From assembly GCF_001194135.2 (NCBI RefSeq), contig NC_068982.1, positions 185,250,268 to 185,314,267 on the forward strand: a stretch of 64,000 nucleotides of DNA, given 5' to 3'. The notes under the pieces were generated by a model that was given only the letters and a program-made list of their open reading frames with translations, was not told the origin of the DNA and ran no database searches. This document shows positions 11,986-53,953 of this stretch, piece by piece. A program made the position numbers and the translations under genes. Origin of the DNA: Octopus bimaculoides. Lineage: Eukaryota. Position 1 is the first letter of the stretch, and every line of letters starts with the position of its first letter.

Positions 11986-11990
11986 ATAAA

Positions 11991-23456: not shown

Positions 23457-24365
23457 TCACTCGGGACCTATAACCAAAGCAGAAAGGGCAAACATGATAA
23501 ATACAACCCCTCCAACCAATGTGACAGTTCTTGTAGAAATCCTCTGTGCTATTATCCGGCCGCCAACCACAGCTAGTCCGGTACAAAGAGAGTGTCCTAA
23601 GACACCACCAATTATAACACCGTAAATATCCTCACGAGCCGCCAAAATAATCGTCGTCACCTGGGATCGATCCCCCCACTCAGCCAGAAAAGTCAGAGTC
23701 AAGGCTTGCAGAAATATTGTAGATATTAATCCGGTCAGCCATCGCCGGCCGGGAGTTCGAATTATGCCAGTCTCTACGTCCTGAGAGTAGCTGGCTTTCT
23801 GCATTTCATCCTCTCTCTTCTTCAGATCAGCTTGCACTTCTTCGTACTCCTCCTGGCCGTCGTCCGCAGACATTTCGTAACCGTCCTTCAGCATCTTCAG
23901 TCCGAATATAGCGAAGAGTAATGAAGAGATATAGAAGGTATATTTCCGAGGGATAATTGTAGTTGCAAAACCGAGAATAGCAGATAAAACAGTCATAAGT
24001 GCCAAAGCTGCCATAGCTCCCAAAAACACTGTCACCCGGGAATGTCGCATGGCCATTATAGCCGCAATGAAGAAGGTTTTATCTCCCAATTCGGACACTA
24101 TAATGACCGATAGAGAAGCAATAAAGGCATGAATAAAGCCTAAATTAGTTGATCCTATCGCTTCGGTCTCTTTCTGTGTTCCATAGGGGCCTGTTTTGTC
24201 AACAGTGTGTGACACCCCCAGTTTGTGTTTGTTCGAGCCCAGTGGTCCTGCATCGTTCTTAATTCCTGGTTCTAATGGAATCGACTCTGCGTTAGATATG
24301 GCAACGAGCAAAGAGAGACCGAATGTAGATATCAAACACCATCTCAGCACCCACGAAACTGTCAT
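23457..24365 (-). CDS. TMEM165: TMEM165/GDT1 family Golgi Ca2+/Mn2+:H+ antiporter, 302 aa, uninterrupted CDS
   Basis: Both UPF0016 motifs intact (SELGDKT, AEWGDRSQ); N-terminal signal-like peptide; acidic central loop DDGQEEYEEVQADLKKREDE; GHSLCTGLAVVGG; no stops or frameshifts. Confidence 0.97.
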   Translation of the reverse strand: MTVSWVLRWCLISTFGLSLLVAISNAESIPLEPGIKNDAGPLGSNKHKLGVSHTVDKTGPYGTQKETEAIGSTNLGFIHAFIASLSVIIVSELGDKTFFIAAIMAMRHSRVTVFLGAMAALALMTVLSAILGFATTIIPRKYTFYISSLLFAIFGLKMLKDGYEMSADDGQEEYEEVQADLKKREDEMQKASYSQDVETGIIRTPGRRWLTGLISTIFLQALTLTFLAEWGDRSQVTTIILAAREDIYGVIIGGVLGHSLCTGLAVVGGRIIAQRISTRTVTLVGGVVFIMFALSALVIGPE

Positions 24366-24391
24366 AGCACGTTCTTTCGCCAGCGTTATTT

Positions 24392-24495
24392 CTGTAGACA
24401 GACACTTAAATCTGTTTTAGGAATAAAGAAGAGAAAGTGAATCAGAAGCGACAGTTATCAACTACGTCTGTCTCGAATTATGTCGACAGACTTAC
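24392..24495 (-). other. Candidate 5'-UTR intron of TMEM165 (84 or 104 nt)
   Basis: Consensus donor CCG|GTAAGT at 24495; pyrimidine tract and acceptors AAACAG| (24412) or CTACAG| (24392) just upstream of the ATG. Confidence 0.65.
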
Positions 24496-24502
24496 CGGAA
24501 GT
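24495..24502 (+). promoter_or_regulatory. ETS-type motif CCGGAAGT in CpG-enriched TMEM165 5' region
   Basis: Exact motif seen; it overlaps the candidate donor; function is inference. Confidence 0.3.
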
Positions 24503-25313
24503 TGACTTCATCTAATATAGAGCCAGCAGTTTTATTTTACGTATCGAAATAAACATTTCGTTGAGTAATATCATTACTTTTTAAAACTTAGTATATAGTG
24601 ATAATGATAAAGAGATAATCATATTAATAATATAAAATAATATTAATGATAATCAAATATTTATACTAAATACTAGACCATAAAGCAACTACAAATATTA
24701 CGGAATTCATTTCTAGCTCTGTGTATAAAAACCAGCAATAAATAATGACGATAACTAGAAGAATGGTAATAATTAACTGAATTAGTTAAATTACTTCTAG
24801 AATACCCTGAACCAATGTAGAGCAGTCATGAATAAAAGATAGCAGCTTTCTCTGCGGATAAAGTAATATACATAGACCGAAAGAAGAAAGGTGAACAAAT
24901 GTCAGACAGAAAGGTGTGACGTGTCTATTCATGTGCGTACACATGTTTAGCGCCGCCAGCCCAATACAGATCGTGTAAAGCTATTACCAAATGTTTTCCA
25001 GACAAGACTATCTCATTTTTTTTTTTTATTATTCTTAGTTTAGTGTGCTCCATGCAACATTATCCAATATGTCCTTTTTCAAGACGGCAGGGCGTGAGCT
25101 GAAGAAAATTTTGCTGTTATTTCTAGCAGGTCTATCGACCACGTACAGGTTTTTTTTTTTTTTTGTAACGTGTAAGTTATACATTACGGAAGGTTGCTGT
25201 AGTCGTTCCCAAGTCAATCTTATTCACCAGACATGATCAAAGATATTCCGGTCATGACCATCTCGTCTTTTTTTTTTTTTGTCAAGGGCCAATTTGATAA
25301 ATTATCTTTTGTA

Positions 25314-25555
25314 TCTTTTACTTATTTCAGTCACTGGACTACAGCCATGATGGGGCACCATTTTAAAGAATTTTTAGTCCATTGAAAACATTTTAAAATC
25401 CTGGTACTAATTCTATCGATCTCTTGGGCTGAACTGCTAAGTTACGGGGACGTAAACACCAATACCAGGTGTAAAGCGGTGGTGGGGTATAAAAACACAC
25501 GCACACGACAGGCTTCTTTCGGTTTCAGTCAACCACATCCATTCACGTGTAAGGG
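25314..25555 (-). mobile_element. SINE family B
   Basis: TTTCAGTCA...CAGCCATGATGGGGCACC tail, GCTGAACTGCTAAGTTACGGGGACGTAAAC body. Confidence 0.8.
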
Positions 25556-26072
25556 TTGTTTAGATGTACATGCTGTAATGCAATACATATACAAATTGTG
25601 ATGCAATACATGTACAGGTGGTTGTGCTATAAAGCGTACATGGTTCTGTGATCTGATGCATGTACATGTTGCTGTGATGTATCAGCTGCAAAGCTGCAAG
25701 AGAACTTAAGGTTGAACATTGGAGAGCTATTTCACTGCTTAACCTGTGAGAGTAGCAGTCAAATCTATCTATAACTTTCACTTTCTTATATAAGGCAAGG
25801 AAATCTTACATGCTTGTATTCCTACAAACTGCTAAAAGAAGACTGGATGATCATGCTTGGAATGCTGCTGATCATAAGTCTGCTTGGTCAGAGTTGAACT
25901 GAGGTTAAAACAACAGCTTAAGGTTGATCACTTAAAATACGGATACAGAATAAAAGGGATTCTTTAGATCTACTGATCAGTCTTCAGGTGACATCTCTGA
26001 GTTAAGTCACAGATTCAATCTGTGTCCTTTATTTAATAATATAAATAATATATATATATATATATATATATA

Positions 26073-26511
26073 GACCAAGACCTTTGGAAATGTGCTGTGC
26101 GTGAGAAGACCCGGCAAGCCAAGTGAGATCGTTGCCAGGGCCCCTGGACTGGCTCTTGTGCGGGTGGCACATGAGATGCACCATTTTGAGCGTGGCTGTT
26201 GCCAGTACCGCCTGACTGGCTCCCGTAGGATTTTCGAGCGAGATCGTTGCCAGTGCCCCTGGACTGGCTCTTGTGCGGGTGGCACATAAAAGACACCATT
26301 TCGAGCGTGGCCGTTTTCATGCGGGTGACACGTAAAAGCACCTACTACACTCTCTGAGTGGTTGGCGTTAGGAAGGGCATCCAGCTGTAGAAACTCTGCC
26401 AAATTTAGATTGGAGCCTGGTGTTGCCATCCGGTTTCATCAGTCCTCAGTCAAGTCGTCCAACCCATGCTAGCATGGAAAGCGGACGTTAAACGATGATG
26501 ATGATGATGAT
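26073..26511 (+). mobile_element. RTE LINE 3' end (ORF stop, tandem modules, tail)
   Basis: WKCAVREKTRQAK* then duplicated modules of about 95 bp, core and (GAT)6. Confidence 0.92.
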
Positions 26512-26569
26512 ATATATACACACATACATGTACATGCCTACATGTATATGTATATATGCATACATATAT

Positions 26570-27010
26570 AGGTACAGGACGTCAAAAAAACGTGAACAAA
26601 ATGCGAAATGAGAACATAAAAAACAAGAGCATGGAAGACGAACTTTTTTTCGAACAATGAAAGAAACAAATAGAGAAACGAGACAGGCAACATAGAGAAC
26701 ATTCCCTTCCTCAGTTGTCCCGTTTTATCTAATCCATGTTTCGAAGGTAGGGACAAGACGCGACTTCGTTAAAACAGTCTTTTCCGCAAAGCAAATTAAA
26801 TAAAATTTGGGATTTTTTGCGGAGGGTTAAAGTGGTAACAAAAACAGGACAGTAAGAACAAAACAGTAAAAACAAATGGTGAGGGCTGTTAAGCCATAAT
26901 GAGGTGAAGTGGTGAATGATGGAAAAATGAGCTTTGAGAAGAGGCAGGCAAAAGCACGTCTTGTCTTTAGGAAGGAAGTGGAAGAAAGAAAGATAGCCGT
27001 TGGTCACATG
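26570..27010 (-). repeat. Probable Penelope-like terminal repeat
   Basis: Homologous to 4795-4925; pyrimidine-rich on the minus strand; contains GAAAC and CTGAGGA words; class assignment is inference. Confidence 0.45.
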
Positions 27011-27189
27011 TGAGCAACGAGAGAGTCAAGGAGGAAATGTGAGAGAGGGAATGGTGAAGGGGAGAGAAGAAGAATTAAAGAAAAGGTGGAAGAGAAAAAC
27101 AAAGGAAGTATCCTTTATTTAATAACTGGGTTTGCTATTCTAACAACTGGCCAAAGCAGAGCAGTACTGCAATTAAAAAAGAAAGACTT

Positions 27190-27376
27190 CAGGTGCAGGC
27201 ATGGCTGTGTGGTAAGAAGTTTGCTTCCCATCCACATGGTTCAGGGTTCAGTCTCACTGTGTAGTACCTTGAGTAAGTGTCTTCTACTATGGCCCTAGGC
27301 CAACCAAAGTCTTTTGAGTGGAGTTGGTAGATGGAAATATAAAGTAGCCTGGTGTGTGTGTGTGTATGTATGTGTG

Positions 27377-27409
<33 letters not shown>

Positions 27410-27568
27410 TTGTCTCCTGCCACTGCTTGACAATCGGTGTTAGTTTGTTTACATACCTGTAGCTAAGTAGCTTGGTAAAAGAGACTGATAGAATAAGTGC
27501 CAGGTTAAAAAAAAAAACAGGTTAATTTTTGGGGGGGCTAAAATACTTTAAGGTGGTGCCCCAGCATG
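27190..27568 (+). mobile_element. SINE family B, near full length
   Basis: A-box GGCTGTGTGGTAAG, B-box GGTTCAGTCTCA, CORE-like ACCTTGAGTAAGTG, internal (TA/TG)n, tail GGTGCCCCAGCATGG. Confidence 0.88.
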
Positions 27569-27570
27569 GC

Positions 27571-27655
27571 ATCTTGGGCAAGTGTCTTCTACTATAGCCT
27601 CAGGCCAACCAAAGCCTTGAGTGGATTTGGTAGACGGAAACTGAAAGAAGCCCGT

Positions 27656-27720
<65 letters not shown>

Positions 27721-27924
27721 TTGTGTGTCTGTGTTTGTCCCCCTAGCATTGCTTGACAACTGATGCTGGTGTGTTTATGTCCCTGTCACTTAGCGGGTCG
27801 GCAAAAAGAGACCGATAGAATAAGTACTAGGCTTACAAAGAATAAGTCTCAGGGTCGACTTGCTTGACTAAAGGCGTTGCTCCAGCATGGCCGCAGTCAA
27901 ATGACTGAAACAAGTAAAAGAGTA
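27571..27924 (+). mobile_element. SINE family B, 5'-truncated, tandem to the previous copy
   Basis: CTTGGGCAAGTGTCTTCTACTATAGCC...TGCTCCAGCATGGCCGCAGTCAAATGACTGAAACAAGTAAAAGAGTA. Confidence 0.92.
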
Positions 27925-30426
27925 ACAATGATGCGTTCAACAGAAATGATGGCAACAAAGGAATCGGTCTAGTGGTTAAGTACTTATAACTGTTGTAAAC
28001 TCATCTCAGAAAAATGCAGACAAACTGTAAAACTAATTGAAGGCTTTCTTCTTTGCTTAGCTTGTTAGGAAGTCTATTGGTATGTAAGGAACATTTTAAA
28101 AATAAATTCTGGTGTGTGAACAACACACGACCAGAACCCAGAAGATCACTATAAATGCTAAGCTTTCTCGTCCTTCTTCCAGCAAATGAACATTCTCAAT
28201 ATGACTGGAACAAAAATACTTCAACTGGCAACAGCTACCAATTTTTTACAAAGCTCAAATAAGGCCCATAATGGGGCACCGATACCACTTTTGGGACAGT
28301 GCTGTTGCTCCATGCACAAAGATTTTAAGCTGCATCCAAAGAAAGGTGACTTGACCTGCCAAACTCTGGTCCACAGATGTACTGTTTCCTCTCTCACTGC
28401 CCTCCTCCTTCTACAAGAGCCACTATTTGAAGCTGGATAATCTCGTGTCACATCTACTCAGGTGCCCTCAGTCACTTGTCTCTCCTCCTCTCATAACCCA
28501 TATGGTCTCTGCCATGTTCAGGCCCTGCACTAACCAATATATTCAATCTTTCCTTTCCCAAGCATTGACCATCTTTGCAGATGTTTTTCCTGCAGCCATC
28601 GACTTGCAACCAATTACACCAGTCTCAGAAATCCGGCAAAAGCCATACTAGACTAAAAGTAAATAAATGGCAAAATGTATAACTGGAAACGTCTCATTTC
28701 TTCTACTAGTTTAAGTACAAGCCAACCTGGAATATTCTGTTTAGTTACTTTACCTGAAGAAACAGCACCCAATTCTCACTTAAATCACACTCTATGTTTA
28801 GAAAAGGAAAGTAAACATCAAATCATTAGTTTGTGACACCTCTGAATCGACTGGAAGGTCATGGATGAATTACCTTTAATCGTCAGTTTGCTTGATCAGG
28901 ATTGACCTGGAGCTAAACAACTAATATTGGCTTTCACTCAAGACAAATGTTCTATATTTTAAACAAAGACAAGATGTTTACACCTTTCATAGAGGAATTA
29001 ATTGTGTTGTAAGTGACTTTTGTTTTGAATATTTTGACTCCAGGGTACAGTTGACCTTTTGGGAAATTAACTCCTTGTTCTAAGGTTTATAACACTTTAC
29101 ATCAGACAATATAAAAACAGTTCAAAATCTGCTAATCTTCACCATCTCACTTCTCCCTCAATGCATGAAATATGCTGTAGTTTAGTTCCAGGCCAGCTGA
29201 ATGAAGCAGATATACAATGAAAGGGCTTTCCAGCCATGACCATGCCAGTGTATTTAGAATCATATCCAATTTTCCTTTTTTTTTTTCTTCTTTTAAAATG
29301 GTAGAATGGAATGAAGGAGGTTTGGCTGCTATCTCAAGCAGATTGACACATCTTCATTGACTTGTTCAGGATGAAGGGGAAGAATGATGCGAAAATGAAG
29401 AAAGTGTCACCTCTTGACCTCTGAAGCAAGTCATGATGTAGATTTTTACACACAAATGAAGTTTTAGGAGAGAGCAAATTTTCGTTTAATTTCATATCAA
29501 TTCTGTGTAAAGGGAGATAATTCATGTTTATAGACGAAATTCACGACTTGTATAACCTTAAATCAGATATGTTACCACCTACTTTACAATCACACATAAC
29601 TTTACAGTTTTGATTAGTAAAAGAGAGGAAGTTGTCTTCAGATCAAAGACCTGACCTAAATGTTTGCAACAGATTAGACTCTGCTAAAGGTACACAGGGA
29701 CATTGAAGGCCTGTTGGTGAAATTTATTTAAGTTAGAGTTTATACAACTGAATCTAAGATATAATCAGATATGTACTGATATAGTTTAAACATGGTGGCA
29801 TACATCTGAATTATCTATGGACAGATGAACAATTGAAAAACTAGCACCATAATGATGTGTGTAATGTAACAAGGAGAGATATACTAGAGGACTTTGCACC
29901 TGTCGAGAGGGAGAGAGAGAAAAAGAGACAATGGTTGAATGAACATGATAGGTTTTGTTGGTTAAAACTTACTTCAGAGCCCATATCTAAAATATACAAT
30001 GACCTTGAATTTTTCTTATCTAATCAACCACACAGAAAATATATATAAAAAAAAAAAGACATTTGCACACTTCTATGTTTGTGTGCCTTCATTATTCAGT
30101 AGTATTAATTATTAGAAATATCTCATAAATAAATAAAACTCATATAAAAAGATGGAAAGGTTTATAGGAAGAAAATCAGTATCTACAGCGGTCAGATTAC
30201 AAATATATATATATATATATATTGTTAATGAGGACAACAAACGTTATGGCAAGACAAACATCTCAAGTCATATACATTATTATTTCTGCTATATCGAATA
30301 TCTACAATGGCTCCATAACTACTATCTTGGCTATAACCTTGGAGCCCTGGTAATCCGTTACAGCACTTACCTAGTCATTTAGATCACCTGTGAATTAAAC
30401 CTCCATGCTGTGTGTGTGTGTATGTG

Positions 30427-30495
<69 letters not shown>

Positions 30496-30629
30496 GCATA
30501 CATACATCCCCATTGTTTAAAAGCATGAAGATGATAATTCCACTCTACTACTACTTATATATATATTTGGATGGCCACAGCTCTGAGCTGAAACTAGAAA
30601 AAAAATATACACATACACACATATATATA

Positions 30630-30862
30630 GTGATAGGTACAATGATGAATTTAGGGTACAGGTAAGAGTTCACCAGGGTTCAGTTCTCAGTCCCCTCCTA
30701 CTCATCATTGTCCTCCAGGTTATAACAGAGGTATTTAAGACTGGTGCTGATGATCTCATCCTCATAGCAGGTCTAATACAATTAGAAAAGGAATTCCAGG
30801 TGTGGAAGCAAAACCTGGAATTAAAGTTAATTAAGCAAAGACCAAAGTTCTAGTAAGCAGAA
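30630..30862 (+). mobile_element. RTE RT fragment
   Basis: EFRVQVRVHQGSVLSPLLLIIVL and ADDL motifs. Confidence 0.8.
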
Positions 30863-33329
30863 CAGACATGACTCCACTCCCTTCAGGTAAATTGTCCTAC
30901 TTGATATGTAGAAAAGGGGTAGACAGGAATTTCATATAGTGTATGAAACAAGCTATGGACACACTAGGTGCAGTGGAATCTCAAGAAGGTTAACAGGGAA
31001 AGTAGTGTTTGTATGCAGGAGCAATAAGCACTAATGACACATGGGAAACCGATTTTCTTGAATGCTCTAGAGCAGGCCTGGCCAACTCGAATTACACTGC
31101 AGGTCACTTTAATCACAAAGTTTTTTGAGGGCTGCTTGCATACTTTATGCACTAATAAGTCAAACAATCAAATTACAGAATCAAGAATTTTTCATTCGTT
31201 TCGTTTGTTTAAAATTATAAAAATGTAGGCTATTGATTTATTGCCACTTATAAATTTTTAATTTATTTTGAAACAAATATGTTACACAAAGAATTTTGTT
31301 TTGAAATTAAACACAATACTTCAAGAAAGTATCAAGCAGACAAAAGTCTGTTCAAACTCAGAGTTAACCAATAATAGCACTATTACTCTAATCACTCCAT
31401 ACATCTAATGAAATTTCTGTCCACACTGCTTCCATCAGCTTGCTATAGGATTTGTTGTGATATGGGTGATAAGATCAAAAATATTTACTGCAGTATAATA
31501 ATATTAGTGCTTATTGTATTGACCAGCTATCCTCAACAGGATTTGAACTTAAAACCAAACCAAGGATTAATATTTAAATGCAAAACAACAATTCTAGTGT
31601 CCTGGTCATTGCAAGAACTTATTTTCAATCAACAATAATGTATTTTTTTGATCCTTGTTTCATCTTGTACTGCCTGTAATAATGGCATGGTCAAACTCCA
31701 TAGAAGAATATGTACAATTGATTTCCTTATGGCTTAGTTATAAGAAGCACAGTGCCTATGATTCTTTTCAGGGCTTCTGAGCTTGGTAGGGTAATGGCCT
31801 GATTGCTTGCAAGAGAGTGAATTCTAATATAACCACCCAAGGTTGACCAGATAGATTAGAATTATTACCAACTAACCAGGTGGTGTTAAACCAGCCAATG
31901 GATAGTGAAATGCTCTTAGCATTTCCTTGGCACCAGTATTATTATTATTATTATTTATCCACAAAGACAACTCTATTATTACTACTGCTGTTTCACCCCC
32001 ATGTAATCTGTGACTGAGCAGATCTATGATCAAAGGCAATCCAGCTGAGACCATGCTTATCTTTTTAAAGGCATGTAAGGACTATTATTATAACCATTAG
32101 ATTCTAATGTGCCTTATCCTCATTGAAGATGGTTGAGTGTGATTTGTGGGAGATTTGGATTTCTGTCAAATGACGTGACAATATTAAGGCTCCCTCAGTA
32201 AAATGGTAATTATACTGCAACTAGTTTTGAATTCCGAAAATAGCCAGATTCCTTCATGTATGTTGTTGATGCCCTTTAGTAATGTATAAATGACTCAAGC
32301 CCTTTGTAAATCAGAGACTTTGGTGAGACTGTGGTCTATTAAATCAACTCTAACATACTACTGGTACAGGTGAATTTGGATAATGGGTAACACACAATTT
32401 GAATGTAGAAATGGAAGGTACAAAACTGTCAAATATCTAATCCTGCAATCACTGTTTGTTATAAACAACACAAATATTTATTTCTAAGAGACAAAATAAA
32501 CATGATTGTAATGAATAAATATACTTTATAAAGTGAATAGATGATATGTACACATAAGAACTACATGACTGCTGCAAACATAATTTTAAATTCCTTGAAG
32601 TAATCACAATGACTGATATTCTACAACTAGTTGGTTATATATATATATATGATGACTTGAAATATTGAGAATTCCTCCTTATAGCATATGAGATGAAAAA
32701 CTAAACTACTTTACCAATAAAAACAATTTTGACCCCCTTTGTTGGAAATTATTTTCAATTATTGTAGAACTTTTGAATAATTGTAGTAATATTTCTTGAG
32801 TGGAAAGCTATAGATATGTTTCATATATGCTAGAAAAATATCCTTGTTAAAAGATGAGAAAAGCTTTAATCCTAAAAATGGCACAACATAACAATAAACC
32901 TGTTCAAGTGACCAGGGCAGTTGAGTGTATGAAAGGCAGTACAGTAGACCAGCTACTCTGGAATCATCGAGCTATGGCAATCAACAGAGGTACTGGAGCC
33001 AAGAAGTGTTGATAAATTTTGGGGACCTCAAAGTTGGTAACGGTTGTGAAGAGGTTGGTGAGGAGAGAAAGCGGGAGAGACTAGACTAAGAAACTAAATA
33101 GATCTCAGCTGTGAGCCAGTTTAATTAATGCTAAATGGACTTCTGAATCACCTTAATTAGTATGTATTGATCGTTCTGCGCAACACATTAGCCCATCCAC
33201 AACTATCATGTTTCTTGGTTTCTTTGAAAGTTTTTGCATGCTAAATTACTAGCCTGTTGTTCAAATTCCAATATCACCATGCTGGGAGTTCACGACGAGA
33301 GGGAAATACCAATTTTAGTATTACACTAG

Positions 33330-33432
33330 TAATTTATTTATTTTAACAAGGACGGATGAAAGGCGAAGTTGACCTCGTTGGGATTCGAACAATAATTACC
33401 ACAACGCGTTTGACCGGTGCTCTAGCGATTCC
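33330..33432 (-). mobile_element. SINE family A, partial
   Basis: GATGAAAGGCGAAGTTGACCTCG...GATTCGAAC. Confidence 0.55.
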
Positions 33433-36291
33433 TATGGTCGAGATGGACAATTTCTAGTTGTTGCTTTGGTAGATGCCCACAATATTATACATTATCGTTC
33501 TAACAATTCTGGCCACCTTTTTCAATTAGATAACTCGTTCACCTGTAAACATGTTTATAAAATCAAAAATCAGTGCAACACCTATGACTTTCAGAAACAT
33601 TTTTTTCGTACTTAGAACTGTCGGAACATGGAATAAACTACCGGCGTCGGCTATTAGCTGTCGGGACTATTTATCCTTTGAAAATTCCTAGTTTCTTGAA
33701 ACTCGCCAACACTACTTTCGATTTGCTTATATATCCATTCATTTTTTGTGACTCTTCGGTTTTTTCGTTTTGTCCTGTGTATTACGCGTCCACTTTCGAC
33801 TTTCATTGTTGTCTTCCTTTACATAACCTATGCTTTCTGTTTACCCTTTTGCGACGAATTATAGTGTACTTTCAGCACTATACACATTAAGCTCATTAAT
33901 ATTTTGCACATGCTCTTTTTTACATGCTGAATTCTGCTCCAGTTTGCAAAGTCAGACATACATACCTACACACATCTCTTTCATAGGTCGCACAAATTAT
34001 GAAGGGGAAATAAAAACGAGGCATAGTCAAGAAAACAGATCTATCTGTTCCATCTTACCTTGGAATTTAATAGCCTCACAGAAATCATTGTCAAGGTTTA
34101 GGGACTCAATTGCAGCAATAACAACACGAAAATCAAGTCACAGAAACTATGACTCCGAGTGACAATGTGCTTTGAACGACTGAGACTAAGAACGATAACT
34201 CTCGAGCAAGCGGTGTATAGTCTCCCTTCGAAAAGAAATACGTCAGCGCTGCGAGAATACTTGCACAGTTGTCTGTAACGTTGCTGGCATGGAGCAGATC
34301 GAACTCTGATTTTTATTTTTATTTTATGTATTTAGTCTTTTTTTTCTGGCTACATCGCACTGCATTGTCACTAAAGTAGAAAGTGAAGCGACTTAACTCC
34401 ACAGAGAAAGTCATTTACTAAAAATTCTGGAAATTCTATCAAAACTGAAACAATTGTTTTCTTCGAAACTGAAAATTTATTTCGAAACACAGAACAAAAC
34501 CAGCATAAAAGAATACATACATGCATGCTGGATCTAGGTTAGAAACCGGTTCTTTCTCTATTGGTAAGGAATCTTGAAATAAACTGCATAATGACACGTA
34601 TTTTCGCTGATGACATCAATGGTTCAAATATTCGTCCAGGAGAAGAAATCAATCCTCGGATTCGAGGGATGAGCCAACGATATATATGTGTATGTCTGTG
34701 CGCACATGCGCACAGCGTGCACATGCATTTCACACACTTTCCTAATGTGCGTGCGTGCGTGTGTGTGTTTGCAAGTGTATGTAAGAGAAGGCGAGAGAGA
34801 AAAAGAAAAACGAATATATTGGATAGAAATGTCAAATATGTATGCATGCATCCATCTATCTCTATCCATACATAATCTTTTAAGTGTTATGAAATTACGA
34901 CATAAAATAATATTTTCTCATGCATTTCATGAATGATGCATTCCGTATATGAGAATGATGCCTGCAAGATTCCTGTAAATAGGTATTAAAGAGATTACCT
35001 GATGTCCTTTGCATGGCATGATATTCTTTAATTTCACTTAACATCTCTTCTAAAGTGTTTGTACAAATGCATCACTGGGCTTAAAGGGAATGCCAACTGA
35101 TTTAGCAACTGTTTGTAAGCATGCTATCCAACAGTTAAAATCTAGGTCTTTGGTAATCATACAAAGCAACAACATGCAATAGAGTGCAGGCACTTCAATC
35201 CAAGACAGGCACAAGAATATGTCCCACCATCCCTCGAAACATGTAGTCCTGTAACAACGGCAATGGTACTTGCAGTGCATGAATCTTGACTTGTTGATCT
35301 CAAAGACCATTTCATTTCCTCAAATCAGCAGAGAATTATTGATACACCACATAGCACATATATCTCAGTTAACTATTGCTTCTGCACTAACAATGATCAT
35401 ATACATAGCATGTTTGCTGTCAACAGCCATCCAATAATAAATACATAAACTCTATATGATAAGGTAGTGGGATATGAGACCCAAAGAAAAAATAATCTTG
35501 TCTATTGTTTTGATAATGGCTGCAGCAGCTCTAAGCATTTCTATCTGAATATGTTTGATTTTTAACTGAAAGCGTTGCTTCACTCATTATAGTACACTGT
35601 GAAATTATGAATTAATCCTAACAATGCAAAAAGTTAACTGTACTTTCAGTGTTCACCACCATAAACAAATATCCCATTTGACATGATTTTTTTCAGTCAA
35701 TTAATGAGTCTTGAGGATGTTATCTACAATTCTCATGACTAACTGCTGTGAAACAGGATTGCTATTTCTTTTATAGCCAACCATTTTGAAATAACCTTTC
35801 AGTTTTAAAAAAAAACATTCTTTCTGTCTCATTTTATGCTGAGTTATAGCCATTATAAACATTATTTTACCTTCATTTTATCATGCTGATCTCTACCAAA
35901 TTAAGTAGTTTCACTTTCTGAATCATAATACAAAAGATTACCAATTTTTTTTTTCAACAAAGGAACCTCTGTATGATTGCTTGACCTACAAGAAATAACA
36001 ACCAAATCTCATCAAAATCATGCATGCTTCTTAGAAAAGAGCACATTTGATAATATAATTCTGAGTAACCAGGATGGTTACAGCTGGAATGTCTTTGATC
36101 ACAGACCTGCTTGATCATGATGGCCTGGGACTAAGCAACAACAACTTAATTTTGTAGAATTTTAATTCATCCATCAATTATGTCCATATTGTAGACATTG
36201 TGGTGGTGAAAAGATTGGTAAGGATATAATGTGAATGCTCCTTCCTTGGTCCCTTTGCATAACTGATTCAAAGAGAGAGAGAGAGAGAGAT

Positions 36292-42559: not shown

Positions 42560-42664
42560 CATATACATACATACATACATACACATATATATATATATAC
42601 ACACACACACATACATGCATGCACGTACATATATATATACATACATACATACATACATGCATAC

Positions 42665-42711
<47 letters not shown>

Positions 42712-42887
42712 NNNNNNNNNNNNNNNNNNNNNNNNNNNNNNNNNNNNNNNNNNNNNNNNNNNNNNNNNNNNNNNNNNNNNNNNNNNNNNNNNNNNNNNNN
42801 NNNNNNNNNNNNNNNNNNNNNNNNNNNNNNNNNNNNNNNNNNNNNNNNNNNNNNNNNNNNNNNNNNNNNNNNNNNNNNNNNNNNNNN
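42560..42887. repeat. (TACA/TA)n microsatellite and N-gap
   Basis: Directly visible; Ns at 42712-42887. Confidence 0.95.
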
Positions 42888-43455: not shown

Positions 43456-44664
43456 AGTTTGTATACTTGTTTATTCATATGCTACTCTGAATTAGGACTT
43501 GAGTGAATTTTGTCAGATTGTCTCCTTGAACCATTTTCTAAATGAAGTGTGCCAGTAAAACGTTTTGTTTGTATTTTGGGATGTAACTTTGTGCTGCTGT
43601 CATCCTCAGATCAGAAGTGATACGTAAGAAATATGCTGTGAGGGAGATACTACTAAGATAATGTAGTCATTCTCTACCATGCACTGTCTTGCACACACAC
43701 GCACAAGCACGCATGCTCACACACACCCAAATAACCAACCAACCACACACACACACCACCCGCTCACACCCAAACAACCAACCATACACACACACACACA
43801 TACGCACATGCAAACACCCTGCCATACCCAACCAACCAACCATACAACCCCCTCACTCTCTTTCTCATACTCATACACACATACACATATATATATATAT
43901 ATATATATATAGAAAGANNNNNNNNNNTGCTCTCATACTCACTCACACTTACATGCAACAATAAAATGGTTTCTACTGCCACAAAAATTGAAATTAATAA
44001 ACAATCCCTTATGATTTTTAAAAGTGTTTACTAACATACATAGTATGTACAAAAAACAATAACAAGGAATAAAGTGAGAGTATAAGGTATCTATGGAAGA
44101 GACTGCTGTGACACCAATTTACATGTATACATTTACATAAAGGGTGGAGTGGGGGTAGTTTGAACCGAAGAATCTGGTGAGGGCTGTGCTGCTGTCTTGT
44201 GAGAACCCCTTATACTACCTTTCAACCATATTGTTACCAGGTTAATACAGAAACTTTACAATCATACTGAAAGGTTTCTGTATTTTTCATGTTTCAAAGT
44301 AAACTTTTCACTTAGAAATACCCAGTCTGTTTAGCAAATACTGTAGTCATGAATGGATGCTTTTGTGTGTTGGCTGTTTAGTAGAAAGTAATCAGGATGG
44401 GATTGCAAATAAGTTGCCTATTCTAACTTGTGTTGTGTGCACTTCATATATTGAGGTCATTACTGTTTGAGACTAATTGAAATGTGTTCCATCTGCCCAA
44501 CTATCACAAGTAAACTGGCACCTGTTGTAGAACTTACATTGGTATATATACTAGTACTTTAACTGAGAAGGAGGTCAGATATTAGGCATTTGAATAGGTG
44601 AGTCAATTTTGCCTTTCCAGTTATAGAAGAACGAACATGCTCTTTCTAAGAGAACTCAAATCCT

Positions 44665-46800: not shown

Positions 46801-46989
46801 TTAAGCAGTAATGACTTCCCCGAAGAGGACTTACTCTTTTCTAATGTGATCGATCTCATTTTAAACATTGGTTTTGATTGTTACAACATTAATCAGCCAG
46901 AACCCTCTTGGCCATGCTTCTTAACCTCTTAGAATATCACTCCTTTTATTGAAGCTGGCCCAAAGAAGTGAGAAGAGCTCTTGTTGACA

Positions 46990-48425: not shown

Positions 48426-48559
48426 AAAGCTTCTGAGGTATGTAAATTTAGTGATGTATTTCCCCTGAAGGAAGAGAGTATGGCTGTTTTAGTATAGACT
48501 TTCTTCCAAAATGCATCAGCTCAAATTTTCTCTCGTACAGTTGCATTTTATTTTTGTCT

Positions 48560-50700
48560 GCCCATTGACTCACAGCATATAGATCAGACTGGAGTTGAGT
48601 TCGGTCTTCTTCTTCATTGATGATTTGCTGGAGCTTAGTGTCATCAGCAAATATTTCACTTTGCAGTGATTTACAACGCTAGAAAGGTCATTTATGTAAA
48701 TTATAAAGAGGAGCGGACCTAAGACAGTCTCCAGAGGGACACCACTGGTGACTTTTGCTGTACTTGAGTGAACTCCATCGACCACAACTTCTTGCGTTCT
48801 ATTTGCCAGGGAATACTTAATCCAGTGTAGAAGTTTTCCACGGATTCCAACATTTGCCAATTTTGAGAGCAACAGTATAATAAAACCATAGGGAGATGAT
48901 GTGATGTGAGTGAAATGAGATGCACAGTGACAGAGGAACATGGAAGTGGAAACGGTGAGTGACAAACAATAAAGGATGATGGGGGAGGAGGGGAGTCTCA
49001 AAGGCAGATGTCGAACGCTTTCCTGAAGTTAAGGTATATGACATCAGAGTTCGAACCTGCTTCCAAGGCTTTAAATATATTTTCAATGTGGTGTAAGAGC
49101 TGTGTTAGACAGTTCCTGCCACAGCGAAAGCCATGCTGATTTGCCTTTAGGATTTTGTGGGTCTCCAGGAAGTCAGCTATCCTTGATCTTACCTCTCTTT
49201 CAAACACTTTAATGATGTGGGTGGTGAGTGAGATTGGGTGATAGTTAACTGCGAGGGATTTGTTTCCCTGTTTGAAAACCGGGATGACAGACTGGGATAG
49301 GAGCTGTTTCGGTATATAACCTGAGTCTAAAGAATTTCTCCAGAGGTTGGTCAGAGGGACTGCAAGTTAGTGTCTACATTCCTTCAGGAGACTAGCGGGG
49401 AATCTATCAGGGCCTACAGCAGAATAGTATTTGACCTCATTTATTGATAGTATGATGTCTGAGGCAGTGAAGGTCATGTCCAAGATTTTATGTTGGGAAT
49501 CAACTTCGTTCGCTTCTCTTATGTCAATATCAGTGGGATCACTAAAGACAGAGCAGTATTTCTGCCATTTCTTTAGCATCGTGTTGGGGAATGCTGTTAT
49601 CATCGATCAAAGGCCCAATGGGTGAGACAGCGGTTCTGTTCTTATTTGCATAAGAATAGAACACTTTTGGGTTCTGTTTGATGTTTTTGATTACCCACTG
49701 TTCCTCTGCAGCTCTTTGATTTTCAATGGAGGTTTTCATGTCAATCTGCAGATGAAGTTTTTCCAACTCCAGCCCTTTTTATTGTTGTTGAATGTGGATG
49801 TTGTATGTGGGAGTATTTTAATTGGTTGATTTTTTTATTGAGTCTTTTGATGCTCCTGATGACTTTTTTTTTCTTTTTAGGGAACTGGTTTCCGTTTGTG
49901 CTAGTGGATTTTGTAGGAGCATGTTTTGAGCATGTATAGGTGACAATGTTCTCAAAGTGTTGCGATGCGGTCTCAATGTGAGTGGAACTGACAGCGAAAG
50001 ACCAGTCAATGAAGGACAGAGCCTTTCTGATTGCTCCCCAGTCTGCTTTGTGGAAGTTTATGTTGTCAAATGAGTGCCGTGGAGTGGGATTGGCTGGGTT
50101 GATTTTGATATGCTAGGAATTAAAATTGCAGAGTACCATGTTGTGGTCTGAGAGGAGAGTTTTTTCATCTGAAATACTGTGAATGGAGCTAGAGTGGTTG
50201 GTTAATATTAGATCCAAGATCATTTTATTCCGTCTTGTTGGTTCGAGCACTAGTTGAGTCAGGAAGAATTTATCCATAAGATTAAAGAGTAATTCTGCTG
50301 CTGCTTTATCTGATGTAGAGCATTCACCTAACTTCAGAGTATTTGTGGGCCAGTTTATATGAGGGAGGTTAAAATCACCCATCACTAGTATGTTTTTGGA
50401 GTTGTATTTTTGAAGGAAGGACTTGATTTTGTCGAGGTACTCTTCAAAGCACTTTAGAGGTGCTTGGGGGTGGAGGGCTGTAAAGACCAACAATGATTAT
50501 GTCTTTGGCCTTGTTGAATATTGATATGGATTCACAGTAGCCATTGGAAAATATGTCCTTGGCATCAACTGAAAAGGAATCATGGCAAAAGATGGCTGTG
50601 CCCCCTTTATTTCGGTCTGTGTGATCTGCATGGACGATAGTGAAATCTTTTATTTTCACCTCGGCATCCATGTGTGCTGTTTAGGTGAGTTTCAGTAAGG
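48560..50700 (-). mobile_element. CR1-like LINE ORF2 (endonuclease and RT), decayed
   Basis: EN: NKGGTAIF, LVMGDFNLPHINW, LDLILTN, SDHN; RT: [45 protein letters not shown]. Confidence 0.92.
48865..49009. repeat. 145-bp inverted duplicate of 47723-47867
   Basis: Reverse-complement match with no difference found by eye; identical translations in two frames in the ORF track. Confidence 0.95.
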
Positions 50701-50725
50701 ATATATATATATATATATCCTTAAG

Positions 50726-50759
<34 letters not shown>

Positions 50760-50859
50760 TTTTTATATAATATGTATATAATATATATATAAGGATTTAC
50801 TTTTCGCAATGAGATAAAAAAAACGAAGGCTGTGTGGGCATACGAACACAAATATATAG

Positions 50860-50970
50860 GCGTTAGGAAGGGCATCAGGCTGTAGAAACCGTGCCAAATC
50901 AGACTGGAACCTGGTGCAGCCCTTCGGCTTACCAGTTCCAGTCAAACCGTCTAAGCAGACGCTAAATGAT
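50860..50970 (+). mobile_element. RTE LINE 3' tail fragment
   Basis: GGCGTTAGGAAGGGCATCAGGCTGTAGAAAC...GACGCTAAATGAT. Confidence 0.75.
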
Positions 50971-52426
50971 CACACACACACACACTCATTTAAGAAATAT
51001 GTATCACGTAATAAAAAAGTAAATATATGTTCAACAAATACGAATAGGTATGTCAGTATGTGTACGTATAGGAATAAACTGTACAAGCGTATATCTGTTT
51101 ACAAGCTTCTACTTTTTTCCCATGTAAGTGATGGTATCTATGTAAATATGCCAAGATTTTTCTGCCTGTGTGTATGTATGCACCACAGATTCGGTATTAT
51201 TGTGTGCCACACACCAATCTGTGTTAACGCTTATCTATTTGGTGCATAAATGCCGGCATCTACGTAAGTGTGTAAGTGTGTATGCTGCTCTCGAGATGTA
51301 TGTGCGTATGTTTTTTTTTTAAATTCCTGTGTCTATGGTGTTTCTTTGACGAATGTGTATAAGCTTTCGTATATGTGCTGCTCTCGAGACGTGTTCAGTT
51401 TTATTTATGTGTATGCCACTCCCTGGCTGACTGCGCATACACACTTACATACGCATGTGCGTTTATGTTGCTCTCTCTAGACGTATGTGCTAGTTTCTGT
51501 AACGCTCAAGAAATATGTGTACATTTTTATATGATTATGTATAGGCGCGTGTGTGTGTATGTTTGTGCGTACATGTATATATATGTGTGTGTATGTTTGT
51601 GCGTACATGTATATATATGTGTGTATGTTTGTGTGTACATGTATATATATATATGTGTGTGTATGTGTGTGTATGTTTGTGCGTACATGTATATATATGT
51701 GTGTATGTTTGTGCGTACATCTATATATATATGTGTGTGTGTATGTTCCCCTGTTGGACGTGCGCAGTACTATTGAAGGGCAGATAACCGACCTTCACCT
51801 TATACAGAGGACGGTATCACCTTGACATATCGACGTCGTCCGCCACCCCAGCTGCCTCATTAAATCTGTAGGCAGTTGCTGTGTCGTTGGCATAACACTC
51901 TTTCTCTAAACACATCGAAGCCAACTACTAAGTTTAGCTGGTGGCAGATAGATAACCGATTCTGGAGGACTACATACTTTTTCGTTAGGCAAGCTAGCAT
52001 TTGACTACTTTTTATTTATCGAAACCTCCCCTAATTCATCGATGTTAGTAGCCGTCTTCACACCCACAAAAAAAAAAAAAAAAACATTAATGTCCTCTCT
52101 TCTTACCGTTTTATTAACATGTTTTGAAAGATAAACTTTATTTCTGACTAATATTGGACACAGCTTTTTCTGCATCGTTTCGGAAGACATAAAGAAGCAG
52201 CAAGGAAACAGTTGTTGATAATTGTGCTCTATCATTATTCTGAAGTACTACGTGTCGAGTCTCTTTCACAGCCTGCCTTCTGACAGTAGACTACACAGTG
52301 ATAATTAATTCCCTTCATTCAACACCAACACATTATAAGGACATCTTTTTTAATCACTCTTCGCTGATCCTCTCGGATTTATAGTTATAGCTGTCTTGTT
52401 TATTAACTGTTGTTGATAGAATCAAC

Positions 52427-53953
52427 ATGGCCAACACAGCTTTCGTAAAGGGTCACCGACGAACGTCAAGCGACATAGAATTCAAGGAGTTGATACGGAG
52501 AGATGCTCAATTAGCAATGCATAAGGAACTAACCAAATTAATACAAACTGCTCCTCCAGTCCAACAACCTAAAGTGAAAAATGAACTTGACCGCTTCCAG
52601 ATTTTGTTCGAAAGATACTTGCAAGAAGCGGGTACATCGCTAAACTGGGAAAAAATCAAAGTGTTACCTGACGATGCCATAAAAAACTACAACGAAATCC
52701 AGCGAACAGAACTGACAAATATGAAGAACATGTTAAACAAACTTGTGGTCCTTAAATTGAACGGAGGTCTTGGCACCAGTATGGGTTGCCAAGGTCCTAA
52801 AAGCGCCATTTCTGTCAGGAACGACCTTACTTTCCTTGACATGACAGTTCAGCAAATTGAGTATTTGAATAAATCGTACGATGCCGACGTACCTTTGGTG
52901 CTCATGAACTCGTTTAATACAGATGAGGATACAGAAAAGATTTTAGGGAAGTACAACCAGATCAAAGTACGTATTTACACTTTTAATCAAAGTAAATTTC
53001 CGAGAATTAACAGAGAATCTCTTTTGCCAATACCGAAATGCATGGCGACCGTTGGTACCGACGGTACACCTAGTTGGTATCCTCCAGGGCACGGTGATAT
53101 TTATGAGAGTTTTGCTGCAGCTGGTCTTCTAGAAGAGTTTATAGAAGCAGGTCGAGAATATGTATTTGTGTCGAACATCGATAATTTGGGAGCTACTGTT
53201 GACCTTCATATTCTGAACCATTTAATTAATCCTCCAATGGGAGGAATAGCACCCGAATTTGTTATGGAAGTTACCGATAAAACAAGAGCTGATGTCAAAG
53301 GTGGTACTTTAGTAGATTACGATGGTAAGCTAAGGTTACTGGAAATTGCCCAGGTACCCAAGGAACATGTTGACGAATTTAAAAGTGTGAGTAAATTTAA
53401 AATCTTCAATACAAACAATTTGTGGATTAAGCTGAATGCTTTGAAAAGAGTCATAGATGAACGAACACTACATATGGAGATTATTGTTAACCCTAAAACA
53501 CTTGATAATGGAATTAATGTAATTCAGCTGGAAACTGCCTCAGGTGCAGCCATCAAAAGCTTTGAAGGGGCAATCGGCATAAACGTACCAAGAAAGCGGT
53601 TTCTTCCAGTGAAAACTACATCTGATTTACTTCTGGTGATGAGCAATTTATATAAAATGAGAACTGGGGCTTTAGAGATGAGTCCTCAACGCTCCTTCCC
53701 ATCAGTGCCGTTAGTTAAACTTGGTATCCAATTCCAAAAAGTGAAGGAATTTTTGCAGAGATTTGCCAGCATCCCAGACATGTTGGAACTAGATCACCTC
53801 ACTGTGTCTGGTGATGTAACATTTGGTAAATCTGTCAGTCTGAAAGGAACTGTTATAATTATAGCCAACCACGGTGATCGTATTGATATTCCGACAGGAG
53901 CTTGTCTTGAGAACAAGATTGTTTCAGGTAACTTAAGAATCTTGGATCATTGA
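52427..53953 (+). CDS. UGP2: UTP-glucose-1-phosphate uridylyltransferase (UDP-glucose pyrophosphorylase), 508 aa, uninterrupted CDS
   Basis: All family motifs intact: KLNGGLGTSMGCQGPKS, WYPPGHGD, FVSNIDNLGA, DVKGGTL, LLEIAQVP, FNTNNLW, QLETA, RFLPVK, C-terminal ENKIVSGNLRILDH. Confidence 0.98.
   Translation: MANTAFVKGHRRTSSDIEFKELIRRDAQLAMHKELTKLIQTAPPVQQPKVKNELDRFQILFERYLQEAGTSLNWEKIKVLPDDAIKNYNEIQRTELTNMKNMLNKLVVLKLNGGLGTSMGCQGPKSAISVRNDLTFLDMTVQQIEYLNKSYDADVPLVLMNSFNTDEDTEKILGKYNQIKVRIYTFNQSKFPRINRESLLPIPKCMATVGTDGTPSWYPPGHGDIYESFAAAGLLEEFIEAGREYVFVSNIDNLGATVDLHILNHLINPPMGGIAPEFVMEVTDKTRADVKGGTLVDYDGKLRLLEIAQVPKEHVDEFKSVSKFKIFNTNNLWIKLNALKRVIDERTLHMEIIVNPKTLDNGINVIQLETASGAAIKSFEGAIGINVPRKRFLPVKTTSDLLLVMSNLYKMRTGALEMSPQRSFPSVPLVKLGIQFQKVKEFLQRFASIPDMLELDHLTVSGDVTFGKSVSLKGTVIIIANHGDRIDIPTGACLENKIVSGNLRILDH

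What the first reader, a model, noticed from the sequence alone, without database searches (positions are those of the whole stretch)
23457..53953. Two intron-free glycosylation-supply genes within 30 kb, each paired with a divergent promoter
Seen: the only two confident genes in the window both have single-exon CDSs, point away from each other, and each is head-to-head with a candidate spliced gene. Known: UGP2 makes UDP-glucose, the precursor of UDP-galactose and UDP-glucuronate; TMEM165 supplies Golgi Mn2+ needed by galactosyltransferases, and its loss impairs galactosylation. Inference: either a co-regulated metabolic neighbourhood (sugar donor plus metal cofactor) built from retrocopies, or a retrogene-friendly open-chromatin domain. 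Two genes are few, so coincidence remains possible.
Basis: partly seen in the sequence, partly recalled or inferred. Interest (0 to 1): 0.7.

Follow-up and report, generated by a model that had tools for sequence, protein, structure and literature searches.

The report
Two old retrogenes beside a thiolase gene
In this stretch of octopus chromosome, two housekeeping genes (a UDP-glucose-making enzyme and a Golgi metal transporter) are ancient, still-functional intron-less copies made from processed mRNA; they sit in and next to an unrelated thiolase gene, and nothing tested suggests that their closeness is a functional "glycosylation cluster".

Summary
The window is Octopus bimaculoides chromosome CM046602.1. 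Both genes are real. TMEM165/GDT1 is 23457-24365 (-), 302 aa. UDP-glucose pyrophosphorylase (UGP) is 52427-53953 (+), 508 aa. Each is one uninterrupted, full-length ORF under strong purifying selection (dN/dS 0.05-0.08). The assembly gaps lie in the microsatellite-rich spacer and touch neither CDS.

They are not the only genes. A 415-aa thiolase gene on the - strand has its first coding exon at 34059-34088. TMEM165 is nested in its first intron on the same strand, so it is not head-to-head with anything. The minus-strand "gene" just upstream of UGP is a LINE endonuclease/RT relic. The thiolase start is 18.3 kb from UGP.

Both genes are single ORFs in another deeply diverged cephalopod, so loss of introns is ancient. 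UGP coexists with a multi-exon paralogue (138-kb gene on another chromosome). Scallop TMEM165 has 7 coding exons, and no second cephalopod copy was seen.

Linkage holds in O. sinensis (35.4 kb). In the other cephalopod lineage the genes lie on different contigs, at least 182 kb apart. Each of the three genes has its own CpG-preserved promoter block.

Verdict: ordinary ancient retrogenes. The co-regulated neighbourhood is unsupported.

The parts
23457..24365 (-). Intron-less CDS of a TMEM165/GDT1-family Golgi cation/proton antiporter (302 aa; motifs ELGDKT and EWGDRS)
   Evidence: dN/dS is 0.065-0.077 against two other Octopus species. It is a single ORF in the ENA cephalopod too.
22001..25500 (.). 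CpG-preserved block (o/e about 0.8-1.4, background 0.26; two sub-blocks, 22001-23000 and 23501-25500) covering TMEM165 and about 1.1 kb 5' of its ATG. It is presumed to be the gene's own promoter.
   Evidence: The ENA cephalopod locus L013 has an equivalent block 5' of the gene.
1..34058 (-). Intron 1 of the thiolase gene; it runs off the left end of the window and hosts TMEM165 in the same orientation
   Evidence: The annotated 415-aa thiolase gene spans the TMEM165 locus in O. bimaculoides and O. sinensis. No thiolase-domain exon was found anywhere in the window.
34059..34088 (-). First coding exon of the thiolase gene (MISVRLLNSK, followed by donor GTAAGA)
   Evidence: It is homologous to the annotated Argonauta hians thiolase CDS start, L005:313-284 (MNFLRILNSK|GTAAGA). 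The surrounding 217-232 nt align at E = 6e-9. A motif scan found it only in these two places.
33001..35000 (.). CpG-preserved block around thiolase exon 1 (presumed thiolase promoter)
52427..53953 (+). Intron-less CDS of UTP--glucose-1-phosphate uridylyltransferase (UGP, 508 aa)
   Evidence: It is a single ORF in O. sinensis, Argonauta and the ENA cephalopod. dN/dS is 0.04-0.08.
50751..53500 (.). CpG-preserved block covering 1.7 kb 5' of UGP and the first 1 kb of its CDS (presumed UGP promoter)
   Evidence: L012 has an equivalent block.
51761..52018 (+). Conserved non-coding element 410-666 nt upstream of the UGP ATG (candidate core promoter or 5' UTR)
   Evidence: 80% identity to Argonauta over 264 nt. 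Long invariant runs appear in a four-species alignment.
48570..50493 (-). Degenerate non-LTR retrotransposon (endonuclease ORF 50113-50493; weak RT ORF 48570-49001). This is the likely source of the 'candidate gene' head-to-head with UGP.
42712..42887 (.). Assembly gap (176 N) in the spacer; an (ATAC)n array at 42563-42711 abuts its left edge
43918..43927 (.). Assembly gap (10 N) in the spacer; a (TA)n run abuts its left edge

Best explanation
The region holds three independent transcription units.

1. A multi-exon thiolase gene lies on the - strand. Its exon 1 is at 34.06-34.09 kb, and its first intron is more than 34 kb long and leaves the window.
2. An intron-less TMEM165/GDT1 gene is nested in that intron, same orientation, 9.7 kb downstream of the thiolase ATG.
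3. An intron-less UGP gene lies 18.3 kb upstream of the thiolase ATG, pointing the other way.

Shown here: both intron-less genes are intact, full-length and under strong purifying selection. Both were already intron-less before octopods split from another deep cephalopod lineage. UGP arose by a cephalopod-specific duplication and coexists with a multi-exon paralogue on another chromosome. Each of the three genes has its own CpG-preserved block.

Inferred: both genes originated by reverse transcription of processed mRNA, that is, as retrogenes. The UGP retrogene became the slowly evolving main copy while its parent diverged faster. The TMEM165 retrogene replaced its parent ('retrogene replacement'). 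Each gene is driven by its own unmethylated promoter. Their 28-kb proximity in Octopus is a historical accident of insertion or rearrangement, not a selected functional cluster.
For: Identity and intactness.

Source of the window (GCA_001194135.2, CM046602.1) and the host thiolase gene.

Thiolase exon 1. No thiolase-domain exons occur in the window.

Purifying selection: UGP dN/dS is 0.046 (O. sinensis), 0.081 (Octopus sp.) and 0.050 (Argonauta). TMEM165 is 0.065 and 0.077.

Ancient intron-less state: complete single ORFs of both genes occur on long genomic contigs of ENA assembly ERZ21867824, with synonymous sites saturated against Octopus.

Ancestral introns: Pecten TMEM165 has 7 coding exons over 8.2 kb and is not nested in a spanning gene. 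The O. sinensis UGP paralogue has a gene range of 138,164 nt for 499 aa, on a different chromosome.

UGP tree: the cephalopod clade has 94% bootstrap. It splits into an intron-less clade (100%) and a paralogue clade (98%), and the octopus paralogue sits on a long branch.

TMEM165 tree: there is one cephalopod clade (100%), and no second cephalopod copy appears among the 120 best hits.

Separate promoters: the only sizeable CpG-preserved blocks in a background of o/e 0.26 sit at the three gene starts, apart from one young repeat. The same pattern appears in the other cephalopod.

Linkage: 35.4 kb in O. sinensis. In Argonauta the thiolase exon 1 lies 9.7 kb upstream of UGP, divergent. In the ENA cephalopod the two genes are on different contigs, at least 182 kb apart.

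Against: No classical retrocopy hallmark survives. The A22 tract 115 nt after the UGP stop codon is absent from O. sinensis and a third Octopus species, so it is a young microsatellite rather than a relic tail. No target-site duplications were identified.

For TMEM165 no parental copy was found, so in-situ loss of all introns cannot be excluded.

No transcript data were available. UTR introns, promoter use and co-expression are therefore untested.

The species behind ENA assembly ERZ21867824 is unknown. Calling it a decapodiform is an inference.

Whether Argonauta has TMEM165 in the thiolase intron could not be checked.

No genome-wide rate of intron-less genes in octopus was found, so 'chance' is argued, not measured.
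Confidence: 0.7

Rival explanations
1. Retrogene-friendly domain. The 5' region of an actively transcribed housekeeping thiolase gene (promoter plus first intron) offered open germline chromatin and regulatory context. Two independent processed copies therefore landed and survived there, and the adjacency is ancestral to coleoids.
For: Both retrogenes lie within 10-18 kb of the thiolase start. The thiolase/UGP divergent arrangement is conserved in Argonauta. It is established knowledge that retrocopies in or near expressed genes are more often transcribed (Kaessmann et al. 2009, cited in PMC7661307). LINE endonuclease/RT relics are abundant in the window.
Against: In the other deep cephalopod lineage the two intron-less orthologues are at least 182 kb apart, on separate contigs. 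No thiolase exon 1 motif or thiolase-domain exon lies within 10 kb of either gene there. Two genes are too few to show enrichment. The LINE copies visible now are far younger than the retrogene events.
Confidence: 0.15
2. Co-regulated glycosylation-supply neighbourhood. UGP (UDP-glucose supply) and TMEM165 (Golgi Mn2+ supply) are kept together because shared regulation benefits galactosylation.
For: Both products feed glycosylation, by established knowledge of human UGP2 and TMEM165-CDG. The pair is conserved, in the same arrangement, in O. sinensis.
Against: The Octopus species are close relatives (dS 0.17-0.35), so conserved order between them is uninformative. The pair is split in the other cephalopod lineage. 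An unrelated thiolase promoter sits between the genes. There are three separate CpG-preserved blocks 9-18 kb apart, and no shared or bidirectional promoter. The functional link was chosen after the fact.
Confidence: 0.05
3. In-situ intron loss. One or both genes sit at their ancestral locus and lost all introns through recombination with a cDNA. For UGP, the multi-exon paralogue would then be the relocated DNA-level duplicate.
For: No parental TMEM165 copy was found. The intron-less UGP is the slower-evolving copy and the one closer to other molluscs: 74-76% identity, against 66-70% for the octopus multi-exon paralogue. No poly(A) or target-site-duplication relics remain.
Against: Scallop TMEM165 is not nested in a thiolase gene. 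Simultaneous loss of all six coding introns is most simply explained by a processed copy. A nested position inside another gene's intron is typical of an insertion.
Confidence: 0.1

Closest known systems
Retrogene replacement / orphan retrogenes (for example amphioxus SYCP1, PMC5803294)
   Same: A single-exon processed copy of a normally multi-exon housekeeping gene is the only copy detected. It is intact, conserved and under purifying selection (TMEM165 here).
   Different: Loss of the parent is inferred only from its absence among the best 120 database hits. No poly(A) tail or target-site duplication remains. The event is much older, pre-dating a deep cephalopod split.
Cephalopod SP6-9b/c intron-less paralogues attributed to early-cephalopod retrotransposition (PMC7661307)
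   Same: An intron-less duplicate coexists with an intron-containing parent. The duplication is cephalopod-specific and old, and is retained across cephalopods (UGP here).
   Different: The SP6-9 copies lie in tandem within 1.5 Mb of the parent. The UGP retrogene is on a different chromosome from its parent and appears to be the more conserved copy.
Nested intronic genes / retrocopies hosted in introns of other genes
   Same: TMEM165 lies wholly within intron 1 of the thiolase gene.
   Different: It is in the same orientation as its host. It has its own CpG-preserved block, so use of the host promoter is not required.
Human UGP2 and TMEM165
   Same: Same Pfam families, with full-length domain coverage and 60-70% identity to vertebrate orthologues.
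   Different: The human genes are multi-exon and unlinked (my own knowledge, not tested here). The octopus CDSs are single exons, 28 kb apart.

Membership tests
GDT1/TMEM165 family (Pfam PF01169) | Two GDT1 repeats, each with an E-x-G-D-[KR]-[ST] motif, in a multi-pass membrane protein | tested here: met
   PF01169 at 5.4e-45 with 2 matched stretches. ELGDKT and EWGDRS are present in the translation.
GDT1/TMEM165 family (Pfam PF01169) | Golgi Mn2+/Ca2+-proton exchange activity | not testable with these tools
   Needs transport assays or complementation.
UDP-glucose pyrophosphorylase (Pfam PF01704, UGP2 type) | Full-length UDPGP domain; close identity to animal UGP2 | tested here: met
   PF01704 at 2.9e-190, profile positions 2-413 of 413. 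Identity is 74-76% to other molluscs and 67-70% to vertebrates over 97-100% of the length.
Retrogene (processed-mRNA-derived functional gene) | CDS lacks the introns present in the ancestral gene | tested here: met
   Single ORFs. Pecten TMEM165 has 7 coding exons. The octopus UGP paralogue spans 138 kb.
Retrogene (processed-mRNA-derived functional gene) | An intron-containing parental gene elsewhere in the genome | tested here: inconclusive
   Met for UGP: the paralogue is on a 57-59 Mb chromosome, against the 192-208 Mb chromosome that carries the intron-less copy. No parent was found for TMEM165, which implies replacement or in-situ loss.
Retrogene (processed-mRNA-derived functional gene) | Poly(A) relic and target-site duplications | tested here: not met
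   The A22 tract after UGP is not conserved among Octopus species, and none was seen after TMEM165. This is expected for events old enough that synonymous sites are saturated, so it weakens proof of the mechanism rather than the reading.
Retrogene (processed-mRNA-derived functional gene) | Functional, not a processed pseudogene | tested here: met
   Intact ORFs in 4-5 species. dN/dS is 0.04-0.08.
Bidirectional (head-to-head) promoter pair | Two divergent gene starts sharing a promoter region, conventionally less than about 1 kb apart | tested here: not met
   No divergent protein-coding gene is called within 10 kb of either gene. The thiolase ATG is 18.3 kb from the UGP ATG. The upstream minus-strand ORFs are LINE relics. 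Non-coding divergent transcripts were not testable.
Co-regulated functional gene neighbourhood / conserved microsynteny | Linkage conserved across deep lineages | tested here: not met
   Conserved in O. sinensis (35.4 kb). In ENA assembly ERZ21867824 the genes lie on different contigs, at least 182 kb apart.
Co-regulated functional gene neighbourhood / conserved microsynteny | Correlated expression or a shared regulatory domain | not testable with these tools
   No expression, ATAC or Hi-C data. The three separate CpG-preserved blocks argue for separate promoters.

The most novel reading that the evidence does not exclude
Processed copies may have taken over core housekeeping functions in the coleoid stem lineage as part of a wider wave. 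UGP (the retrogene is now the conserved copy and the parent is diverging) and TMEM165 (the parent is gone) would be two examples. The thiolase 5' region would be a conserved 'landing pad' whose chromatin let both copies acquire CpG-island-like promoters. If general, retrogene replacement would be an unrecognised contributor to the large-scale reorganisation of cephalopod genomes.
Probability: 0.12. Interest if true: 0.55.

Novelty: new member of a known kind. Interest (0 to 1): 0.25.

Why it matters
The finding corrects the local picture. There are three genes here, not two. One of them is nested inside another, and there are no divergent partner genes.

It also supplies two documented cases of ancient, functional retrogenes of core metabolic and Golgi genes in cephalopods. 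One probably replaced its parent; the other is more conserved than its parent. The paper searches run here turned up no genome-wide survey of cephalopod retrogenes, so these cases could serve as seeds and positive controls for one.

The finding does not support a new kind of metabolic gene cluster.

Tried and rejected
1. Thiolase coding exons. I searched the window and the fetched loci with tblastn and with an HMM built from three bacterial thiolases recalled from memory, used only as probes. Nothing was found. Only the short first coding exon is in the window, and it was found through the annotated Argonauta CDS start. The thiolase subtype could not be determined. A PTS2-like reading of its N-terminus was considered and dropped because it does not fit the consensus.

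2. Logan contigs L006-L011 as possible cDNAs. They are colinear with the genome and end in microsatellites, so they say nothing about splicing.

3. Poly(A) relic after UGP. Rejected, because it is not conserved.

4. A possible 5'-UTR intron (GTAAGT...AG) about 50-130 nt upstream of the TMEM165 ATG was noted by eye. It could not be tested.

5. Rfam and tRNA scans of the window found nothing.

6. A 45-nt match between the Argonauta UGP upstream region and window 26492-26532 abuts a repeat of about 470 bp. I treated it as repeat-related.

7. The look-up of UGP isoform X2 (P0086) failed because only the longest isoform is indexed. Isoform X1 worked, but the gene was too long for its DNA to be returned, so intron positions of the paralogue were not obtained.

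8. Literature searches for cephalopod retrogene surveys, octopus UGP, and intron-less TMEM165 found nothing specific. PMC5534336 reports that 75% of StringTie loci in octopus are single-exon, but this is attributed largely to fragmentation and is not usable as a null.

9. Continuity across the two N gaps could not be checked against O. sinensis, because the fetched loci stop short of that interval. The unfetched middle is about 15.4 kb in O. sinensis against about 13.4 kb in the window, so no large piece seems to be missing.


Full report
WHERE THE WINDOW IS FROM. Exact-protein look-ups place both ORFs on Octopus bimaculoides chromosome CM046602.1 (assembly GCA_001194135.2, 192.5 Mb). Window position 1 corresponds to about 185,250,268 in the record. 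The window is 37.5% G+C and has five N runs.

CHECKING THE OBSERVATION. ORF 23457-24365 (-) encodes 302 aa with two GDT1 repeats (PF01169, 5.4e-45). ORF 52427-53953 (+) encodes 508 aa and covers the whole UDPGP profile (PF01704, 2.9e-190). Both align over 97-100% of their length to mollusc homologues, so each complete CDS is one exon. The genes point away from each other, and their ATGs are 28,062 bp apart.

The two flagged gaps (42712-42887 and 43918-43927) lie in the spacer. An (ATAC)n array and a (TA)n run abut their left edges. They do not touch a CDS, so frame continuity is not an issue. Only the exact distance is uncertain. The independent O. sinensis assembly has the same arrangement, with 35,428 bp between the ATGs.

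The annotations of O. bimaculoides and O. sinensis both show a 415-aa thiolase gene (Thiolase_N/Thiolase_C) on the same strand as TMEM165 and spanning it. In Argonauta hians the CDS of the orthologous 415-aa thiolase starts 9.7 kb upstream of UGP, in divergent orientation. That start reads ATG...MNFLRILNSK followed by GTAAGA.

The homologous exon in the window is at 34088-34059 (-): MISVRLLNSK followed by GTAAGA. The surrounding 217-232 nt align at E = 6e-9. A motif scan finds this pattern at no other place in the fetched loci. No thiolase-domain exon occurs anywhere in the window.

It follows that everything left of 34059 is thiolase intron 1. TMEM165 is nested in it, in the same orientation, 9.7 kb downstream of the thiolase ATG. 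UGP lies 18.3 kb upstream of the thiolase ATG.

No other protein-coding gene is called within 10 kb of either intron-less gene in either Octopus annotation. The minus-strand ORFs just upstream of UGP are a LINE endonuclease (50113-50493, 7e-15) and a weak RT match (48570-49001). More RT fragments lie at 44864-45442 and 57657-59258. The claim that each gene is head-to-head with a candidate spliced gene is therefore not supported.

PROMOTER ARCHITECTURE. The window is strongly CpG-depleted (median o/e 0.26). The only CpG-preserved blocks are the following:
- 22.0-25.5 kb, covering TMEM165 and its flanks;
- 26.25-27.0 kb, a young repeat of about 470 bp with a second copy at 15187-15653;
- 33.0-35.0 kb, around thiolase exon 1;
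- 50.75-53.5 kb, covering the UGP 5' flank and 5' CDS.

The same picture appears in the other cephalopod described below. There the background is 0.12-0.17, with a single CpG-preserved region (one to three adjacent blocks) covering about 2 kb 5' of each intron-less gene and the start of its CDS. I read these blocks as three separate germline-unmethylated promoters; this is an inference. A 258-nt element 410-666 nt upstream of the UGP ATG is 80% identical in Argonauta, with long invariant runs. It is a candidate core promoter or 5' UTR.

ARE THE GENES FUNCTIONAL? Yes. dN/dS for UGP is 0.046 (O. sinensis), 0.081 (a third Octopus species from Logan contigs) and 0.050 (Argonauta). For TMEM165 it is 0.065 and 0.077.

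ARE THEY RETROCOPIES, AND HOW OLD?

Age. Complete single ORFs of both genes sit on long genomic contigs (331 kb and 61.5 kb) of ENA assembly ERZ21867824. This is an unidentified cephalopod whose UGP is 88% and whose TMEM165 is 73% identical to the window's proteins. Synonymous sites are saturated against Octopus, and only the CDSs align. The intron-less state therefore pre-dates a deep cephalopod split. Calling that split octopod versus decapodiform is my inference.

UGP. A neighbour-joining tree (497 columns, 200 bootstraps) gives a cephalopod-specific clade at 94%. It splits into an intron-less clade (100%) and a paralogue clade (98%). The paralogue clade contains the annotated octopus 'isoform X1/X2...' genes and two Logan sequences. 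The O. sinensis paralogue has a gene range of 138,164 nt for 499 aa and lies on a different chromosome. This is the classic parent-plus-retrogene pattern. The intron-less copy is the more conserved one: 74-76% identical to other molluscs, against 66-70% for the octopus paralogue, which sits on a long branch.

TMEM165. The scallop orthologue has 7 coding exons over 8.2 kb and is not inside a spanning gene. All cephalopod sequences form one clade at 100%. No second cephalopod copy is among the 120 best hits. This suggests retrogene replacement, although in-situ loss of all introns is not excluded.

Hallmarks. No poly(A) or target-site relic survives. The A22 tract after UGP is missing in two other Octopus species. 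Given the age of the events, that is expected.

IS THE ADJACENCY MEANINGFUL? Order and orientation are conserved in O. sinensis, but that species is close (dS 0.17-0.35), so this says little. Argonauta conserves the thiolase/UGP arrangement. Its TMEM165 could not be examined, because the look-ups were exhausted and no annotated protein was found.

In the ENA cephalopod, UGP sits 172.5 kb from one end of its contig and 157.3 kb from the other. TMEM165 sits 24.4 kb and 36.3 kb from the ends of a different contig. The two genes are therefore at least 182 kb apart in any arrangement, and at least 197 kb apart in the octopus arrangement. No thiolase exon lies within 10 kb of either gene there.

Three observations argue against a selected, co-regulated 'glycosylation-supply' unit: tight linkage is not maintained across cephalopods, an unrelated gene's promoter lies between the two genes, and each gene has its own CpG-preserved block. 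The functional link between them was drawn after the fact. A retrogene-friendly domain around the thiolase 5' end remains possible but has no positive support. I found no genome-wide count of intron-less conserved genes in octopus, so the chance expectation is argued rather than measured. As an illustration, uniform placement in 2.5 Gb gives about 3 pairs within 30 kb for 500 such genes and about 12 for 1000.

COMPARISON WITH WHAT IS KNOWN. These are ordinary members of known kinds: functional retrogenes, one probably a replacement of its parent (compare amphioxus SYCP1, PMC5803294) and one coexisting with its parent. Intron-less SP6-9b/c paralogues have been attributed to early-cephalopod retrotransposition (PMC7661307). 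TMEM165 is also a nested intronic gene. Membership of the GDT1 and UDPGP families is met at the sequence level. The criteria for a bidirectional promoter pair and for conserved microsynteny were tested and not met.

VERDICT. The two intron-free CDSs and their orientation are real. The statements 'only two genes' and 'each paired with a divergent gene or promoter' are wrong. A retrocopy origin is well supported, and co-regulation is unsupported. Interest is low to moderate. The value lies in two clean, datable examples of ancient housekeeping retrogenes in cephalopods and in a corrected annotation of the locus.

Noticed in passing
window 1-64000; blocks at 22001-25500, 26251-27000, 33001-35000, 50751-53500: The window is very CpG-depleted (median o/e 0.26) apart from sharp CpG-preserved blocks at the three gene starts and one young repeat. 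The ENA cephalopod loci L012 and L013 show an even lower background (0.12-0.17) with a CpG-preserved region 5' of each intron-less gene.
   Followed up: partly
window 51761-52018: Non-coding element upstream of UGP, 80% identical between O. bimaculoides and Argonauta. It contains long invariant runs (for example GGGCAGATAACCGACCTTCACCTT). It is a candidate core promoter or 5' UTR.
   Followed up: partly
window 15187-15653 and 26046-26511; several copies in O. sinensis loci L003 and L004: A dispersed repeat of about 470 bp (G+C about 47%, CpG-rich, so probably young), with no Pfam match to its longest ORF. It is SINE-like or the tail of another transposable element.
   Followed up: no
window 44864-45442 (+), 57101-57260, 57657-59258 (+), 48570-50493 (-); about 6.3-7.7 kb (-): Several degenerate non-LTR retrotransposon fragments (RVT_1 and Exo_endo_phos_2 hits). 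At least three copies share the same 3' region. A 10-N gap (6323-6332) interrupts one RT-like ORF.
   Followed up: partly
window 55595-56994, around the 100-N gap at 56019-56118: More than 1 kb of compound (TA)n/(CA)n-type microsatellite produces spurious 170-200-aa ORFs on both strands. It is an assembly break point, not a gene.
   Followed up: no
octopus UGP paralogue (P0247, P0248; other chromosome, not in the window): The multi-exon UGP paralogue has a 138-kb gene range and evolves markedly faster in octopus than the intron-less copy. This may mean sub- or neofunctionalisation of the parent after the retrogene took over.
   Followed up: partly
window 24412-24494 (-), upstream of the TMEM165 ATG: GGTAAGT followed about 80 nt later by a polypyrimidine tract and AG. 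This looks like a short 5'-UTR intron, but there is no transcript evidence.
   Followed up: no
L002 (window 13457-34365): The listed range of the thiolase gene starts at locus position 1, although the ATG exon I mapped is at L002 position 278. This could be an annotated 5' UTR or upstream exon, or clipping by the tool.
   Followed up: no
protein P0122 (JGI, 462 aa): A TMEM165 hit with an internally duplicated segment of about 160 aa (the same sequence appears twice). It is probably an assembly artefact of a metatranscriptome contig, and it explains the hit's inflated bit score.
   Followed up: no
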